This document shows positions 44,368-52,520 of a stretch of DNA of 64,000 nt, in pieces. Position 1 is the stretch's first letter; each line of letters opens with the position of its first letter. This DNA is from Adineta vaga. Its lineage: Eukaryota; Animalia; Rotifera. The translations under genes were made by a program, and so were the position numbers. The notes beneath the pieces were generated by a model that saw only the letters and a list, made by a program, of their open reading frames with translations, did not search any database and was not told where the DNA came from. Location of the stretch: the NCBI GenBank assembly GCA_021613535.1, contig CP075492.1:9982001-10046000 (forward strand). The letters run 5' to 3'.

Positions 44368-45990
44368 CTACGGTGAATCTGATGCTGTTGATGTTGCTGT
44401 TGCTCGCTTATCGTGTGCTTCTTGCCATAATTCACCCATTTTCTGTAGGGCAACACATCGACGTCGTCGAGTTTCGCGATTACATGTTGCATCGTTGAGT
44501 ACACGATCACAAACATCTCGTTCGATACTTTCAATTTCAAGTTTTGTTGCGCGCCAAAGTGCTTCCATTGATTTAGCTGCTGTATCTGCTTCGAGTTTAC
44601 GCTTTTCCTCTTCAGTCAATGGAACAGGTGGTTGTGCAGACGAAGCTTTACCATGACGATGATGTTTCACTGTCGAAGATGAAGGTGAAGTCGATGCCGA
44701 TGTTGTCGAATTCGTATTCGGTTGTTGTGTTGATGCAGATGCAGATGCAGATGCAGACGTTGATGCAGAAGCTGAAGCTGAAGCAGTCGGTTCCGGAGGA
44801 ACAAAACCTTCATATTCTAAATGACCTGAATGATGTGTAAATGGATATTGAGAGTTTTGTCCATCTTCATGTGCTGCTGCTTCTTCATCAGCAATTTGTG
44901 CTAATTTAGACATTGATTGTCCCCATTCAACAGCACATTTCACTGTTTTAACTGTTTCCTTAACGACATGTACACGTTCCTTCCATGAGGATTGTACATG
45001 TTTACCAAAACCTAATACACGTTTACCAATATGACCTTCTTGTGAATCTAATTTATTTAACCATAATTTAGCTTTGGATGTATAGATATATCCAATAGCA
45101 TGTAATAAATGTTCACCATAGGGCGCACTTAATAAATTTGGAATGTCCAAACGAGTCACTTCTGTAAAAGTATTTAAAGTCTCTTTTTGTTGTTGTTCAC
45201 TACAGTTTGATGGTAGTGATTCGGTAAAAATAGATAATTTATAAGATAAATTTTGTGCTAATTGAGTAACACGTGCTTCACGTGCCTGAGAACGTTCGTC
45301 AGCGTAAGCAAGACGTTTACGCATTTTTTCTTCTTTTTGTTCACGTGTTTCTTCTACACTTTTATTTTCAGCATCTTTAATAACTTCACTAATTGCATGT
45401 TTAAACGATTTAGCTAATTCAAAATCACCAATAATCTTTGTAAATTGTTCACCACCAAACATTAATCGAAAGAATTCTTCAGCATCAAAATCTTCTAAAT
45501 TAATTCCATCCGAACCATTAGCAACAAGACGATCATCTTTACCATATCTAAATACAAGAAAAAAAATAGAGACAAATTTAATCTTCAAACTTTCTTTCTT
45601 CTATGTACCTATTGTAAAGTTTTCTTTTTTCTGGATCACTGAGTATACCTATAAGTAAACAAAAGATAATCGATGCTGTCTTCAATAAATAAAAGTTATC
45701 ATCTTACTATAAGCCTGAGAAATAAGTTTAAATCTTTCTGCATATTCTCGTCGAGTGAAATCATTGAGATTCTGTGTTCGATCGGGATGATATTGTAACG
45801 AAAGTGAATAATAAGCTTTCTTAATTTCCGATGCAGTTGCCGTTGGTGAAACATTAAGAATATTGTAATAAGTTCTATCTAATGGTGCTTCGTCTGTACC
45901 ATTTTTCCCGAGAAATCCAGAACGTATACCACCGCCACTACTAGAGGATTTCTTTTTATCATCATTATCACCGGATGATGCAGAAGCCAT
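44368..45990 (-). CDS. DnaJ-domain protein with DnaJ-X region (Caj1/Djp1-like; 3 exons)
   Basis: J domain YYNIL.VS..A...EIKKAY...YHPD..FKLISQAY.ILSDP.KR..Y.RYG; then DAEEFF.LMFGGEQF..IIG, G..LLHAIGYIY, EIES..R.VCD.VL.D, R..AL..MG. Confidence 0.8.
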
Positions 45991-46098: not shown

Positions 46099-46821
46099 TT
46101 ATGCATGGATTGTATTAACAGTGGATTTATCAGCATCGATTTTTTCGTTATAATGAATTAGTTGTCGAAGAAAAGCAGCGTTTGGTTGAATGATATGACG
46201 ACGTGAACGAAGATGCGTAAGTGCCTGTTCAATAGACATGGAATGATATTTTATCAAATATGCACAACATAATGTTGACGAACGAGATACACCACAAGCA
46301 CAATGGACAAGTACACGACCATCACATTGTCGTGCATCTTCAATAAATTGACAAGCTTGTTCGAAATATAACGACATATCAAATGTTGTACAATCATCAG
46401 CTTTTATGAAAAGATGTCTGATATTTGAAGAAATATACGCTGATCTTGGTTGAATCCAAACAACTGACAAAATATGAGTAATATTTAAACGAGTGAGATA
46501 ATCCTAATTATATAGTAAATATATTCAGTATTAATAGAGAATAACAAAAATAAAACTTACTTTATCATTCAATGATTTCAATCCACCTAAATAAAGAAAT
46601 TTTCTGAAAACAAGCGTAGGTTCTGGAGGTATGATATGTCGTGGAAATCGACTACTTAATAGATGAGTACGAATATGATTAATACGTTCTTCAATCGGAT
46701 CAATCAGATTCTCATGTGTTGTTGTTGTTGTTTTTGTTTTAGATGTGACGTTTTTCGGTTTATAGGATGTAGCAATATGAGTCTTCGATGTTCGTAAAGG
46801 TCGATGCAATGCCGTCGCCAT
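46099..46821 (-). CDS. Atypical dual-specificity protein phosphatase (2 exons)
   Basis: PT.V..FLYLG, general-acid DD, FIEDA...GRVLVHCACGVSRSST, AYLI, IIQPNAAFLRQL. Confidence 0.9.
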
Positions 46822-47138
46822 ATAAATATATATATATATAAATGATTAAATGAATAAGAAAAAAAGATTTTTCTTTTCGTTGATCAATCAATTCATACAT
46901 TCATTTCGTAATGGTCGATGAGTCAAGGTCGACATTTTCATTGACTCATTAGAGACATCTCTCAATGGTAGATTTTAGATTCGATCCCAATATTTTTCTT
47001 TGATAGATGTCTGTATTAGTCACGTTTTCTTCTTCGAACTAAAAAGATTTAATTTTATTTATTTTTTTTCTGTAAAAAGAAAACTAAGAAATACAATAAC
47101 AACAACGAACGAAAAACAAACTGTTTTTAAACACTGTC

Positions 47139-50100
47139 CTATCGACGTTGTATAGTAGGCATATTATGAAATGTTGATATCGAATGTTCATCAGGAAATG
47201 TACAAGTTACTTGAGATTGTTTTTTCGCTTCGAAACGATGATCTGGTGAGAGATATATTTCATCAATTTCATCATCTCGTCGATTGAGATTTTTCAATTG
47301 TGATACATTAGTTGTTAAAGATTTTAATTGTTGATAAACAAAGCGAAGATCACTTGTTTGTTCATAATTAAAATTATATCGATAACCGGATCGTTTAGCT
47401 GGAATTGGAGGTTGTTTCATTATTGGATGATCATATAATAAAATAGATGAATGTTGATCACTGTTTCGTTGTTTTTCATCCGATGAATTTCCAGTCAAAA
47501 CAACAGCTGCAGCTGTTGTTGAAGATATTAAACCTTCACCATTTGTTGCCACTAATAATGCATGTTTACGAAGAAATTTCAAATATTCATTGTGTATTAA
47601 TGTATAACAAAGATGCCATTTAAATCGAACGGAATGAACTCGTGTATGCACAATAGTATCGTACACTAATTTATTATTTTTAGATTGATGATTTAGTCGA
47701 CGTTTACGTTCAATATCATGCCAAATTATATCACAAAATGTTACTAAAAATAGAATTTGAATCGAGATCGTAATTCATCAAATTTCTTTGTGAAAAGTAA
47801 AAACAAAATAACACTCGTAATATTCTTACCCAATAACGGATGTCCATGAATGATTTCCATATGAATAAATGTAACATACGTTGCATAACCTTGATCTAAT
47901 CTTTCTAAATTTCTTCCCATAAATGAATAATCTAATCTTCCCATGAATAAAAATGAAGCTAAAACAGATTTGGATACACGAATAAAACATGATAAAATGC
48001 CCAGAAAACAATCAAAGAAAAAATTGAAATAATTAAATATAAAATAAATTCGTCGATTATTTAATGATGGTGTTCGACCAAAATTTTGTAAGAAGACAAA
48101 TTCCGATAATAATGATATAAGAATATGTTTCAATATATAAATTAATACAATTGGTAAACACAATGCTAACATATTTTGAAACCATCTAGTATCATATCGA
48201 ATCCAAAGACGAAGAATTAAACAAATAACAAATGAAATTTTATAGAATATAATAAATCCCCATGCTGTATAGCCACATAAATAACCAGAAAAATGTAAAC
48301 ATTTCGACATTAATTCATTATTCGAAAAATTATGACGAGGTGGAATATCGAGATATTTTCCAGCATAAGCAGATATTAAATGTTGTTGAATTTTAATTAA
48401 ACCATTGAATATTTGTGTACAGTAAATAAGAACAGAAAGAATTGAACAAAGAAAAAGATCATTAACAAATGTTGTACCCCAATCAATATTCCAATTGAAT
48501 TGATGAAGAACTAATAGATGTATACGATCTAGTTGACTTTGAACTGAATGTATACCGTAGAATGTTAATAAACATGTTAGATTATAAATTACTATGAGTA
48601 CAACAGTATAAGTACATAGAATTTGATTGGAAAATGTAAAATAACGATGCCAACGATAGATTCTAGCAAATGGACGAGTCAAAACATTGTTGTAATACAT
48701 ATCCGACGATGTTTTACTTTTGAATAAACCTTGTGTATAATAAAATTCTGGTTTAGTTTGGTAATCGGGTACTAATGAGTCAATGGAAAGTGTAGATGAA
48801 ACTAATGATATTTGATGAACTTTTTCATTTATTGTATGATTTTTTATTATTGTTGATTGTTGGCAACATCGACATTTGAGTTGTTGCATTAATAAATAAA
48901 AGAATTTAACAAATACAAAAGATATCAAAGTAAAATGTGGTAAATTTCGAATTATAAGATAGTTGATATCGGCTTGAGATAATTCATCTGTTGATTTTTG
49001 TAAAAGTAATGTTCGACCAAAACGAAATAAGGAAAAACGAGAACAATAACTTGCATAAACTAATGAATAAGTACCATCAATAAATGTATAGATCAAGCCA
49101 AGTGTGTAAGATATTGGATGTGCAATATTTACACTATAAAAAAATCGAAAATAACAATAATGATTTGTAATTTTTCAATGTATCTATAAGAAAAACTTTA
49201 CCTGACTAATAATGGGAAATATCTCATTCCAACGAGTAATACAATTCCAATTCGTTTTAATAATTCAATAATAATTCCTTCATTATCAACTCTATAATTC
49301 GTATTTAATCGAACTAATAATTCTTCTAAGATTTTCAAGACTTCATTTGCAGATATACCAAAAATAGCTGCAATAACATGACGTTGCCGTTTATCGAATA
49401 AATTAAATGGCATTGGTAATGATGGTTTTCCATTACAAAAATTTAAACAAACTGTATCCCGTTTTCTTAAGCATGAACATATCAATGTAACAAGAATAGC
49501 TAATGGTAATGAAACAAAATTTTGCCAAACATAATTATCAAATTGTCGACATTGATGAAGACGATGAATTGTTGAATTGAGTTTTTGTATTAATGTTATA
49601 TTTATACTTTGATTCGAAATCGATGGAAGTGAAAGACGATATTGAATAAATGGGATTGTTATTAAGCAAAATGTTGCAATTAGAAAAGTACTGAAGAGAA
49701 GAATAAATGTTGATGAATTGCAAAGATTTGTATAGGATAGATTAGAAAGTAATTTGAATAGGCTATCAAAACTTTTTTCTTGTTTAATTGAATGATGAAT
49801 TTGATGTTTACCAAAACCAAAACCACTAAAATCAAATAAAACAATTTCAATGATTACTCGATTTTATCTTTTTATAGTATCACAAGAAATTTTTTTTTAT
49901 CATTCGTTATTCTATTCCAATCATTGTCTATGCCATTCAGAAATTACAAATCAACTCATCTCATTGCATCATAACACAAAAGAAAACAAACTTGATTGTT
50001 TTATTACATCATCTTTCATTCGAATGAAACCATCAATATTTAAATAAACTTGTTCGTCATTCTTACCTGTTATCTAAACAATGAAGTTTACCATAGATTG

Positions 50101-51764
50101 TTGAAGAACGATCTAATTTCTTTTTCAATATTCTATAGATTGATCGAAGTAGAATTGGTGTTAAACATGCAAGAATAACAAATATTGCTGCCATGATTAC
50201 TTGACTACCTTCTTGACTAACTACAAAAAAGATTGATTAAGAAAATTAAAAAAAACTTTTTTTTCTTACTTGATCGACATCGATCTCCTCCATAAAGAAA
50301 ATAACATTCGCAACGAAATTGTCCATCATCTGTATTTACACATCGACCATGTTTACCACAGATATCATTCAATGAACTACAGCGATCAACAACTGCAAAG
50401 AAAGAACGACAAACCTTCTATAGATTAAAACAATGAATTGATGAAAACAACAATCAAACCTTTTTCACAAATAAAATTCAATTTTCGATCGCATACATCA
50501 ACATTCATGCATAATCGTCCACGACGAGCACGATCAAGAATACCGCATGAACGATGACGAGGTTCAATTGGTAATCGATCTTCACAGAGATCGGCTTCAC
50601 TATAATATGTATAGTCTGATAAAGCTCGACCATTAATCCAAGACCACGATTCTAAGAAATATAAATTTTCATTTCGAAAATACAAATAGATTCTCTCTTT
50701 TTTTTTACCATTGAAATAATGAAATCCGACATAGAAATCATCTCGTACATCAGTTAGATTTCTTGCAATATAATCAAATTCATTATCACTATCAATAACA
50801 ACAAGATCTGCACGAAATCTTGCACATTCTTGACGTGCTTCAGTCCATGAACGTTTAATTGGAAATTTCCAATAACAAGATGCAGCAAAATATTGCCATG
50901 CTATTGGACATTGAGCTAGGAAAAGAATAGATACGATAATTAATACTGTCCATTAAAGAGAACAGTTACAATTGCTAATTGATTAGTTGACACCCTTCAT
51001 GATTCCCTTATGAAATCTTTCATAACTATACATTTTAAATGAATCGTTTCGAATTTCAAGACATAACAAACATGATCGGATTGGATCTGTCATTGTCTCT
51101 GATTGTTACTCGTTTAAAACGAATAAAAAATAAAACTAAAATGTACTTGAAGGATAATATTCATTTATCACATGTGAATCTGTATAACAATAATAGTCTT
51201 CGTACTCAATCAAGGTATATGAAAGCGTGTCTGATGATTTCTTTCGTATGTATAATTGTTCAGACAAGTGTCTATATAGGTATATATATATATGTAATAT
51301 GTTACATTGAACCTCTTAATGTATATATACTAGACATAAAATATTTTGACCATCATCTTATCGTTGTATGAACGATAATTGACTTTGAAAATGCATTGTC
51401 GCGGGTCGGAGGACATACAGTGTTTGTCGCGTGTATATCTCAAGATCGACTATCTTTGTCTTTCATATTTTCAATACATATATATAAACGTTTATATACA
51501 ATGAGACGATACTTTTAGATTAATGATTGAGATGAAAGAGAAATCTAACTGAAGACACACAACATGAAACATTATTTATAGTTGATTATTGACTTAAAAG
51601 ATTTCTTTCGATTGACACTTACATTTTTCTTGAATTTTTTCAGTGATTTTTTCTTTGGCTTTTGTTTTCAATTTTCGAAATCGATTCTTCCAATTATCCG
51701 AAGATGTATTCGAAGAAATCATTGTTATTAATACCAAAAGAAGTAAAATCGATCGTATCAACAT
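47139..51764 (-). CDS. C-type lectin/EGF - STRA6-family (RBP receptor-like) fusion protein; exons 51764-51623, 50915-50709, 50651-50460, 50392-50270, 50220-50067, 49825-49202, 49133-47830, 47743-47139
   Basis: Signal peptide; CTLD CP.AW....SCY...WTEAR..C....LVVIDS.NE...W.W.NG...C.....FICEK; EGF C.....ICG.HG.C.N...F.C.C...Y.G.RC; TM helices; STRA6 motifs GKPSLPMPF, LNNRR, RLDYS..GR.LE.LD.GY.TY, HP.L.TFC, W.L.YTL.HN..L...RK. All junctions are GT-AG and in phase. Confidence 0.8.
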
Positions 51765-52520
51765 TTTTTGACGTTGTTAGATAAAATCGGATATCTAAAA
51801 AGGTCAAGATTGGAAACAACTGAAAATAAGAGAAAGGGCATGCATCATGTATTGATAAGAAAGTGACGACATCATATGACAGCATAAGAAAATACAATGA
51901 AGTGAATCTAAAGATGACTTAGGAGAAAAGAGATTCACCTACCTTACAACCAAGTGTCTCGTCGAATAATGATGAGCTCATAATCATAATCGTAATTTAT
52001 GACGCGCTCGATATGTCCCTTGTCTTTCCTCTTCTCTCCTTTTCTGTCTGTCTCGCATCTGGTTTCAGTTTTGTGATATCACCTATTTCTTTTTTTTCTC
52101 CCTCTTTTCCCTTTGTATATTCGATGGTCTACACATATCCGATTAATTAGAAAAAGTTCACTCTGTATGTGTGTATATATCTATATGCATCCACTTACAT
52201 AAAACAATTCGACTACTGCATATGGATATATTCAGGTGAGAAAAAGACCTTTTAGCAAGTACCAAAAATAAATGGTTCACTCATGATTTATACGCTTAAT
52301 TCGAGCTATTTGGTCAAGGTAAAAAAAATGAAGAGAAAAAAGACGGAAATTCTACTCACTATTTTCAATAAAGATATCTAATAAAAAGCATTGTCGAACA
52401 TCGTTATGATGAGATATCTAACACGTTTTGATGGACAGCACAAACAGTGTCTGGTCTGTAGCGGTATCCTCGAGGCTAAATGCACCTTAATTGGCTGTGC
52501 CATCGATCATACAATAGAAA

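What the first reader, a model, noticed from the sequence alone, without database searches (positions are those of the whole stretch)
47139..51764. C-type lectin + EGF ectodomain fused in frame to a STRA6-type lipid/retinoid channel
Seen: the exon carrying the first STRA6 TM helix (49825-49202) is open from its acceptor with no ATG before the STRA6 core, so it needs upstream exons. Those upstream exons encode signal peptide (ATG 51764), CTLD, EGF and a TM helix, and every junction is GT-AG and phase-matched (e.g. ..HCLDN AG|T GGT.., ..QEK T|CT CAA TGT). Two extra TM helices would return the chain to the extracellular side before the core. Known: vertebrate STRA6/RBPR2 have only short N-termini, bind RBP4 and carry C-terminal calmodulin-binding helices; the W.L.YTL.HN..L...RK segment is retained here. 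Inference: a hybrid receptor coupling lectin-type recognition to a hydrophobic-ligand channel and CaM signalling, in an animal not expected to have RBP4. The CTLD lacks canonical EPN/QPD and WND (it has EPR), so it may bind protein or lipid carriers rather than Ca2+/sugar. I do not know this architecture from model animals.
Basis: partly seen in the sequence, partly recalled or inferred. Interest (0 to 1): 0.88.

Follow-up and report, generated by a model that had tools for sequence, protein, structure and literature searches.

The report
Rotifer STRA6 receptor with lectin-EGF ectodomain
A rotifer gene really does join a lectin-like and an EGF-like outer domain, through two extra membrane helices, to a complete STRA6-type (vitamin A receptor family) membrane protein; this design is unpublished but is the normal form of a large gene family in rotifers and thorny-headed worms.

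Summary
Confirmed. On the minus strand, eight GT-AG, phase-matched exons (51764-47139) give one open 1116-codon frame. Searched exon by exon, Pfam finds Lectin_C, then EGF, then RBP_receptor (STRA6).

Contigs from a spliced (RNA-derived) public run join 50067|49825. That is the junction between the lectin/EGF/TM part and the STRA6 part. Four other predicted junctions are also seen.

The Rotaria sordida ortholog is colinear through all seven exons it covers, with introns at the same positions. Two Pomphorhynchus (Acanthocephala) proteins have the same three Pfam domains.

It holds 19 STRA6-like loci. Of the 18 others, 17 have an EGF exon just upstream, and about 8 also have a lectin-like N-terminus. 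So this is the family norm in rotifers and their acanthocephalan kin, not a one-off. This scan had already noted it at two other loci of this genome.

Caveats:
- The only RNA contig across intron 3 uses another acceptor (50417), which shifts the frame.
- Junctions 51623|50915 and 49202|49133 were not covered.
- Function is inferred: lectin-assisted capture of a lipophilic cargo, regulated by calmodulin.

No paper found describes the architecture.

The parts
51623..51764 (-). Exon 1: start codon at 51764, hydrophobic signal-like N-terminus, Lys-rich stretch
   Evidence: 62% identical to residues 2-48 of the Rotaria sordida ortholog P0182. The junction to exon 2 was not covered by RNA contigs.
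50709..50915 (-). Exon 2: N-terminal half of the C-type lectin-like domain
   Evidence: Pfam Lectin_C E=4.4e-6, 27.8 bits, profile positions 2-47. 84% identical to P0182. RNA joint 50709|50651.
50460..50651 (-). Exon 3: C-terminal half of the lectin-like domain, with EPR for EPN and M-N-V for WND
   Evidence: Pfam Lectin_C profile positions 55-107, 13.4 bits. 94% identical to P0182, the best-conserved exon.
50270..50392 (-). Exon 4: six-cysteine EGF domain (productive acceptor at 50392)
   Evidence: Pfam EGF 23.8 bits against a cut-off of 21.5. 88% identical to P0182, with the same junction residues. RNA joint 50270|50220.
50393..50417 (-). 25-nt extension of exon 4 when the alternative acceptor AG at 50419-50418 is used. 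It shifts the frame and gives a stop after 10 codons.
   Evidence: RNA contig joint 50460|50417 in run X6. Frame read. There is no equivalent AG in the Rotaria sordida intron.
50067..50220 (-). Exon 5: extra TM helix A (about 50147-50203), followed by a basic, presumably cytoplasmic stretch
   Evidence: Hydropathy peak 2.55 at aa 228-246. 70% identical to P0182. RNA joint 50067|49825 with 83 and 173 nt on the two sides.
49202..49825 (-). Exon 6: extra TM helix B (49645-49710), a linker with three N-glycosylation sequons, STRA6 TM1 (49468-49524) and the start of the STRA6 core
   Evidence: Pfam RBP_receptor E=2.8e-10 from exon residue 103. Hydropathy and sequons. No in-frame ATG before TM1.
47830..49133 (-). 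Exon 7: main STRA6 / RBP_receptor transmembrane core
   Evidence: Pfam RBP_receptor E=1.1e-33, 117 bits. Zebrafish STRA6 5SY1 E=4.8e-12. 571 relatives in the representative library.
47139..47743 (-). Exon 8: end of the core, BP2-like calmodulin-binding helix (47562-47627), a roughly 140-aa C-terminal tail, and stop TAG at 47141-47139
   Evidence: Pfam RBP_receptor profile positions 568-605, 20 bits. Motif match to the sheep and zebrafish BP2 peptides. RNA joint 47830|47743 in two runs.

Best explanation
Shown: this is one eight-exon gene of the bdelloid rotifer Adineta vaga (chromosome-scale contig 3). It encodes a 1116-residue multi-pass membrane protein.

The order of parts is: signal peptide; a selectin-like pair of a C-type lectin-like domain and an EGF domain; extra TM helix A; a basic loop; extra TM helix B; a short linker with glycosylation sequons; then a complete STRA6/RBPR2-type core with its BP2 helix and a C-terminal tail.

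Inferred topology: the lectin-EGF pair is outside the cell. The two extra helices take the chain in and out again, so that STRA6 TM1 starts from the outside, as in zebrafish STRA6.

Inferred mechanism:
- The lectin-like domain has lost the Ca2+/sugar site and resembles protein- or lipoprotein-binding CTLDs. It captures a carrier or particle at the cell surface.
- It presents lipophilic cargo to the STRA6-type cleft. In vertebrates that job is done by soluble RBP4 docking on STRA6.
- Calmodulin on the BP2 helix regulates the direction or rate of transport.

The gene is one of about 19 paralogs in this genome that share this build, and the build is common to Syndermata.
For: Gene model and domains:
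- One open frame with GT-AG, phase-matched exons.
- Domains found exon by exon.

RNA evidence:
- Spliced contigs of run X6 join E2/E3, E3/E4, E4/E5, E5/E6 and E7/E8. Run X1 also joins E7/E8. Runs X4 and X5 are unspliced DNA.

Relatives:
- Rotaria sordida ortholog P0182 carries PF00059+PF14752 and is colinear with E1-E7. Identity is 84-94% in the lectin exons against about 72% in the core.
- Its locus has the same exon sizes (207, 192, 123 nt) and the same AACAG|GT donor before the STRA6 exon.
- Pomphorhynchus laevis P0002 and P0007 have Lectin_C+EGF+RBP_receptor.
- Adineta steineri, A. ricciae and Brachionus proteins have EGF followed by two helices before the core.
- In this genome, 17 of the 18 other loci carry an EGF exon upstream on the same strand.

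Structure and motifs:
- The core matches solved STRA6 by sequence.
- In the AlphaFold model of homolog P0002 the core matches 5SY1 by fold (Foldseek E=2.6e-12, TM 0.66). Its N-terminal domain matches LOX-1, NKR-P1, CD69 and CD94-type CTLDs.
- The BP2 motif is conserved.
Against: - The only RNA contig spanning intron 3 uses acceptor 50417. This adds 25 nt and gives a premature stop after the lectin domain.
- RNA depth is only about 4, from assembled contigs and not reads.
- Junctions E1/E2 and E6/E7 were not covered.
- No single molecule spanning E1-E8 was seen.
- No ligand, transport, glycan-binding or calmodulin-binding data exist.
- E8 alone finds no solved structure by sequence.
- The structure model is of a 40%-identical homolog, with only moderate confidence in the lectin domain and the extra helices (pLDDT about 50-75).
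Confidence: 0.75

Rival explanations
1. The main product is not the fusion. Use of the 50417 acceptor gives an mRNA that stops 10 codons after the lectin domain. That mRNA would encode a small secreted lectin or be degraded. The full-length lectin-EGF-STRA6 protein would then be a minor or conditional isoform.
For: The single RNA contig across intron 3 (run X6, 255 nt, covering E3-E4-E5) uses 50417. The site has a canonical AG and gives a 42-nt intron.
Against: - The EGF exon is read in frame with the lectin exon in the Rotaria ortholog, at 88% identity and with the same junction residues.
- The Rotaria intron has no such upstream AG.
- The same contig continues into E5, and another contig joins E5 to E6, so the downstream exons are spliced and kept.
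- Contig depth is about 4, and assembly drops minor variants.
Confidence: 0.15
2. These are two neighbouring genes: a lectin-EGF single-pass protein and a STRA6-like protein. The joined form would be a read-through or chimeric transcript, or a gene-prediction artefact.
For: - Retaining intron 5 would stop translation one codon after the donor and give a 273-aa single-pass protein. The intron also contains an AATAAA.
- One Rotaria sp. Silwood1 model (P0153) starts just at the exon-6 equivalent.
- Bdelloids are known to trans-splice (my own knowledge, not checked here).
Against: - The RNA contig joins 50067|49825 with 83 and 173 nt on either side.
- Exon 6 has no ATG before STRA6 TM1.
- Phase and donor are conserved in Rotaria sordida.
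- The same order is seen at 17 of 18 paralogous loci and in acanthocephalan proteins.
- Only with both extra helices does TM1 start from the outside.
- The Silwood1 copy is broken and lies at a contig end.
Confidence: 0.05
3. It is one fused protein, but the lectin-EGF pair does not feed cargo to the channel. It would serve adhesion, oligomerisation, sorting or signalling. The STRA6-like core would work independently, or as a signalling scaffold and not as a transporter.
For: - The lectin domain lacks the sugar-binding motifs.
- Its nearest folds are NK-receptor-type CTLDs that bind proteins.
- About half of the paralogs have EGF but no detectable lectin domain.
- Invertebrate STRA6-like proteins have no known function (PMC3184775).
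Against: - The lectin exons are the most conserved part of the protein (84-94% against about 72%).
- The fixed EGF-helix-loop-helix tether to TM1 is kept across the whole family. This points to a functional coupling with the core.
Confidence: 0.25

Closest known systems
Vertebrate STRA6 (zebrafish structure 5SY1, in complex with calmodulin)
   Same: - RBP_receptor Pfam family.
- Sequence match to 5SY1, E=4.8e-12.
- Fold match of the homolog model, TM 0.66.
- Conserved R-L-D / G-R / D-x-G-Y block at the end of the core.
- BP2 calmodulin-helix motif.
   Different: - About 370 extra N-terminal residues: signal peptide, lectin-like domain, EGF and two extra TM helices.
- Only about 16-25% identity in the core.
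- No RBP4 partner is expected outside vertebrates (PMC3184775).
- RBP4-binding residues were not examined.
STRA6-like / RBPR2 and invertebrate STRA6-like proteins
   Same: Same family. Amphioxus sequences group with vertebrate Stra6l and not with Stra6 (PMC3184775). Typical hits of 600-750 aa have a short glycosylated N-terminus directly before TM1.
   Different: Those have no lectin, EGF or extra helices. Among the listed hits, every one that a source assigns to an organism and that has a long N-terminal extension is from Rotifera or Acanthocephala.
Selectins (lectin domain directly followed by EGF)
   Same: A C-type lectin-like domain is immediately followed by one EGF domain at the N-terminus of a membrane protein. 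P- and L-selectin align across both domains with the ortholog.
   Different: There are no complement-control repeats. The EPN and WND Ca2+/sugar motifs are lost. The anchor is a multi-pass transporter-like protein and not a single helix.
Non-sugar CTLDs: LOX-1, NKR-P1, CD69, CD94, and DEC-205 / Endo180 domains
   Same: These are the best sequence and fold matches for the lectin-like domain. They are CTLDs that bind proteins or oxidised lipoprotein without the Ca2+ site.
   Different: Identity is only 18-25%. No ligand is known here.
Paralogs in the same genome noted earlier by this scan (s1-494318, s1-505308)
   Same: Same lectin-EGF-STRA6 build. The earlier follow-up reached the same family-wide conclusion. 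The locus at contig 3 near 12.07 Mb is L023 in my census.
   Different: These are different loci, at most about 35-40% identical in the core. This copy has the clearest Pfam Lectin_C match and a close Rotaria ortholog.

Membership tests
STRA6 / RBP_receptor (PF14752) | Profile match above the curated cut-off | tested here: met
   E7 scores 117.3 bits and E6 40 bits against a cut-off of 25. E8 scores 20 bits on the last 38 profile positions.
STRA6 / RBP_receptor (PF14752) | Homology to the solved STRA6 structure | tested here: met
   E7 against 5sy1_A: E=4.8e-12 over 293 residues. Model of homolog P0002 against 5sy1_A: Foldseek E=2.6e-12, TM 0.66.
STRA6 / RBP_receptor (PF14752) | Nine TM helices plus an intramembrane helix, with the N-terminus of TM1 outside | tested here: inconclusive
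   Hydropathy gives about 8-9 peaks in the core. The homolog model is all-helical and aligns over 657 columns. Orientation is inferred from charge and sequons only.
STRA6 / RBP_receptor (PF14752) | C-terminal BP2 calmodulin-binding helix | tested here: met
   At sequence level only. The motif W.L.YTL.HN..L...RK at 47562-47627 matches the sheep BP2 peptide and most of the zebrafish one. Binding was not tested.
STRA6 / RBP_receptor (PF14752) | Binds holo-RBP4 and transports retinol | not testable with these tools
   This needs binding and uptake assays. RBP4 is regarded as a vertebrate-type component (PMC3184775).
STRA6 / RBP_receptor (PF14752) | Short N-terminus directly before TM1 (the usual architecture) | tested here: not met
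   About 370 residues with three domains and two helices precede TM1. This is the point of difference.
C-type lectin-like domain (PF00059) | Profile match and the conserved cysteine/WIGL-type framework | tested here: met
   E2 scores 27.8 bits against a cut-off of 22.6. E3 covers profile positions 55-107. Ortholog P0182 carries PF00059 and hits 171 solved CTLD chains.
C-type lectin-like domain (PF00059) | Ca2+-dependent sugar site (EPN or QPD, plus WND) | tested here: not met
   EPR and M-N-V occupy these positions, in both Adineta and Rotaria. So it is a lectin-like fold, and not a shown lectin.
EGF domain (PF00008) | Six-cysteine pattern and profile match | tested here: met
   23.8 bits against a cut-off of 21.5. 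The six cysteines have EGF spacing and are conserved in relatives.
Selectin family | Lectin-EGF pair followed by complement-control repeats and a single TM helix; functional EPN/WND site | tested here: not met
   No Sushi/CCP match. The motifs are lost. The anchor is multi-pass.

The most novel reading that the evidence does not exclude
In Syndermata the STRA6-type transporter carries its own built-in ligand-capture module in place of a soluble RBP4-like carrier. The roughly 19 paralogs, with diverged lectin-like or EGF-only ectodomains, would form a repertoire of surface receptors. Each would direct a different carrier or lipophilic cargo (retinoids, carotenoids, sterols, fatty acids) into the same channel type under calmodulin control. 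This would show how STRA6-family proteins recognised cargo before RBP4 existed.
Probability: 0.25. Interest if true: 0.8.

Novelty: new variant of a known kind. Interest (0 to 1): 0.55.

Why it matters
STRA6 is the vitamin A receptor of vertebrates. The function of its invertebrate relatives is unknown (PMC3184775).

A whole clade of animals tethers a lectin-like and an EGF domain to this core through a fixed two-helix adaptor. That offers a natural experiment on how such transporters meet their cargo without RBP4. The lectin exons are more conserved than the core, which points to a real extracellular partner.

Rotifers have RXR (PMC7225927), so retinoid or lipid handling is a reasonable context. 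One A. vaga STRA6-like gene is already reported as stress-responsive (PMC12220480), but its architecture was not discussed there.

For annotation, it shows that the 'EGF-like domain-containing' and unnamed proteins of rotifers and acanthocephalans belong to one expanded receptor family.

Tried and rejected
1. Joined protein. All searches were made exon by exon, by reference. The exons were joined only inside a local script, to test that the frame is open and to plot hydropathy. Full-length homologs (P0002, P0182) stood in wherever a whole protein was needed.

2. The search for homologous proteins with a seven-protein alignment returned only its own first sequence. It was uninformative for a census of the architecture.

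3. The ESM Atlas search with P0002 gave no usable hit.

4. The Rotaria sp. Silwood1 locus L013 is a broken copy at a contig end. It has only a remnant of the exon-3 equivalent, so it neither supports nor refutes the fusion.

5. E8 alone against solved structures gave only chance-level hits. The BP2 assignment rests on Pfam and on the published peptides.

6. Calmodulin docking was not run. The best EF-hand loci in the genome were calmodulin-like and not canonical calmodulin, and the tool takes no eukaryotic reference.

It was repeated with 101 rows.

8. Literature searches for STRA6 with lectin, rotifer or the Pfam name found no description of the architecture.

9. Pseudogene reading rejected. 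The frame is intact, it is expressed, and it is conserved.
Full report
**Observation**

The minus strand between 51764 and 47139 reads as eight exons. Their coordinates are 51764-51623, 50915-50709, 50651-50460, 50392-50270, 50220-50067, 49825-49202, 49133-47830 and 47743-47139.

- A local script confirmed that every intron is GT-AG and that the phases match. The exons sum to 3351 nt, with a single stop at the end, giving 1116 codons.
- Exon 6 is open from a stop at 49866-49864. It has no in-frame ATG before the first STRA6 helix, so it cannot start a complete protein on its own.
- The window has about 30% G+C and mostly 49-86 nt introns.

**Rule followed**

The joined protein was not given to any search tool. 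Each exon was searched by reference, and stored full-length homologs were used where a whole protein was needed. The join was made only in a local script, for the open-frame test and the hydropathy plot.

**Domains, exon by exon**

| Exon | Pfam match | Score |
|---|---|---|
| E2 | Lectin_C, profile 2-47 | 27.8 bits (cut-off 22.6) |
| E3 | Lectin_C, profile 55-107 | 13.4 bits |
| E4 | EGF | 23.8 bits (cut-off 21.5) |
| E6 | RBP_receptor, from exon residue 103 | 40 bits |
| E7 | RBP_receptor | 117 bits, E=1.1e-33 |
| E8 | RBP_receptor, last 38 profile positions | 20 bits |

- E7 matches zebrafish STRA6 (5SY1) at E=4.8e-12.
- Hydropathy gives a signal-like N-terminus, helix A at aa 228-246 and helix B at aa 312-333. 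STRA6 TM1 follows at aa 374-392.
- A basic stretch follows helix A. Three N-glycosylation sequons lie between helix B and TM1.
- This fits the lectin-EGF pair being outside, the A-B loop inside, and TM1 entering from outside. The orientation is inferred, not measured.

**One gene or two**

Four public runs were laid on 46800-52200. Runs X4 and X5 cover introns without gaps, so they are DNA. Runs X6 and X1 carry joints with CT..AC ends, which are GT..AG on the minus strand, so they derive from RNA.

X6 contigs join:
- 50709|50651.
- 50460|50417.
- 50270|50220.
- 50067|49825, with 83 and 173 nt on the two sides.
- 47830|47743, which X1 also shows.

The limits are:
- These are assembled contigs at depth about 4.
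- 51623|50915 and 49202|49133 were not covered.
- No single molecule spans the whole gene.

**An unexpected isoform**

The contig across intron 3 uses an AG at 50419-50418, not the one at 50394-50393. This lengthens exon 4 by 25 nt and stops the frame after ten codons.

The productive junction is the conserved one. The Rotaria ortholog reads lectin to EGF with the same junction residues, and its intron has no upstream AG. The share of each form cannot be judged from contigs. This is kept as a rival reading at 0.15.

**Organism**

The window's genome has 100.8 Mb in 6 contigs. Contigs 1 and 6 have exactly the lengths of the contigs that carry the NCBI Adineta vaga proteins UJR16802.1 and UJR38048.1. 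The window is therefore A. vaga, contig 3, 9,982,001-10,046,000.

**Relatives**

A full HMMER scan with E7 found 571 relatives. Many are 970-1300 aa long, with the core far from the N-terminus.

- Pomphorhynchus laevis (Acanthocephala) P0002 and P0007 carry Lectin_C + EGF + RBP_receptor.
- Proteins from Adineta steineri, A. ricciae, Rotaria sordida and Brachionus calyciflorus show an EGF followed by two helices before the core. Some are named only 'EGF-like domain-containing protein'.
- The partial Rotaria sordida protein P0182 (PF00059+PF14752) is the ortholog. It is colinear with E1-E7. Identities are 62, 84, 94, 88, 70, 72 and 72%, with exactly one residue left over at each split codon.
- Its locus has exons of 207, 192 and 123 nt, like E2-E4. 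It has the same AACAG|GT donor before a 2-kb intron that leads to the STRA6 exon.
- Hits with a short N-terminus look like ordinary STRA6-like proteins.
- Every long-N-terminus hit that a source assigns to an organism is a rotifer or an acanthocephalan. Several others come from unnamed metagenome contigs.

**Family in this genome**

E7 finds 19 loci. I fetched the 18 others with upstream flanks and compared them with the N-terminal parts of family members.

- 17 have an EGF exon a few hundred bases upstream of the core, on the same strand.
- The exception (L021) is a partial copy near L014.
- About 8 also match the lectin-like N-terminal region: L022, L024, L025, L026, L029, L030, L031 and, weakly, L023.
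- The architecture is thus the family norm.
- This scan had already noted it at two other loci of this genome. One follow-up reached the same conclusion, and one of those loci is my L023.

**Structure**

An AlphaFold model of the full-length homolog P0002, built with 101 aligned sequences, has mean pLDDT 67.6 and pTM 0.65.

- The core is confident, with many blocks at 85-96.
- The lectin-like domain, the EGF and the two extra long helices (226-262 and 354-395) are moderate.
- The loop between the two helices is disordered.
- Foldseek puts 5SY1 first (E=2.6e-12, TM 0.66 by target). CTLDs of the LOX-1, NKR-P1B, CD94, CD69 and DNGR-1 type follow for the N-terminal domain.
- By sequence, the ortholog's ectodomain is nearest to DEC-205 and Endo180 domains. 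It aligns with P- and L-selectin across lectin plus EGF.

**Lectin site and calmodulin helix**

- E3 has EPR where sugar-binding CTLDs have EPN or QPD, and M-N-V where they have WND. Rotaria has the same. It is a lectin-like fold without the canonical Ca2+/sugar site.
- In E8, the segment at 47562-47627 fits W.L.YTL.HN..L...RK. That is the pattern of the sheep STRA6 BP2 peptide and largely of the zebrafish one.
- BP2 is the main calmodulin-binding helix, with sub-nanomolar affinity in zebrafish (PMC7154012 and PMC12714816).
- Calmodulin binding here is inferred. I could not assemble a calmodulin by reference for a docking test.

**Mechanism**

Shown:
- A single expressed gene with this domain order.
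- Conservation across Syndermata.
- Lectin exons that are more conserved than the core.

Inferred:
- The ectodomain captures a carrier or particle and hands a lipophilic cargo to the STRA6-type cleft.
- Calmodulin on BP2 regulates this step.

Background:
- Invertebrate STRA6-like proteins have no assigned function, and RBP4 is a vertebrate-type component (PMC3184775).
- Rotifers have RXR (PMC7225927).
- One A. vaga STRA6-like gene was among the most down-regulated in a spaceflight transcriptome (PMC12220480).

**Novelty and verdict**

None of the paper searches turned up a description of this architecture. It does exist in public protein sets as uncharacterised predictions.

I rate it a new variant of a known kind. 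It is real, undescribed and clade-wide. However, it is one of many copies, it has already been met by this scan elsewhere in the genome, and its function is untested. Interest is 0.55.

Noticed in passing
window 50393-50419 (-): An alternative 3' splice site in intron 3 was seen in an RNA contig. It adds 25 nt, and the frame stops 10 codons after the lectin domain. The product could be a secreted lectin-only protein or an unproductive isoform. The site is not conserved in Rotaria sordida.
   Followed up: partly
window 49826-50066 (-): Intron 5 begins with an in-frame stop one codon after the donor and contains an AATAAA. Retaining it would give a 273-aa single-pass lectin-EGF-TM protein. No RNA evidence for this was seen.
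   Followed up: no
window 46099-46821 (-): The next gene starts only about 320 nt downstream of the STRA6-like stop. It is a dual-specificity phosphatase (Pfam DSPc, E=2.4e-31) with an upstream exon starting at the ATG at 46821. An RNA contig of higher depth lies on it.
   Followed up: partly
window 44368-45990 (-): A J-domain protein gene: DnaJ domain in the exon at 45685-45990 and a DnaJ-X domain in the 406-aa open frame at 44371-45588.
   Followed up: partly
window 47091-47603: The RNA contig of run X1 differs from the window at 7 of 513 positions, while run X6 differs at 2. This suggests a different strain or allele in that study.
   Followed up: no
G000 contig 4, 13.246 and 13.263 Mb (L021, L014); contig 3, 7.31 and 7.68 Mb (L031, L022): STRA6-like paralogs occur partly in local pairs. 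L021 looks like a partial copy lacking the N-terminal exons. Several matches carry in-frame stops that may be introns or decay.
   Followed up: partly
L013 1-9442 (Rotaria sp. Silwood1): This Rotaria copy of the gene is interrupted after the first third of the exon-7 equivalent. Its 90% cluster also holds retroelement-like proteins (P0151, P0152). This suggests a transposon insertion or a chimeric prediction.
   Followed up: no
L038 4684-6746 (Rotaria sordida): The intron before the STRA6 exon is about 2 kb in Rotaria sordida, against 241 nt in Adineta vaga. The other introns keep similar small sizes.
   Followed up: no
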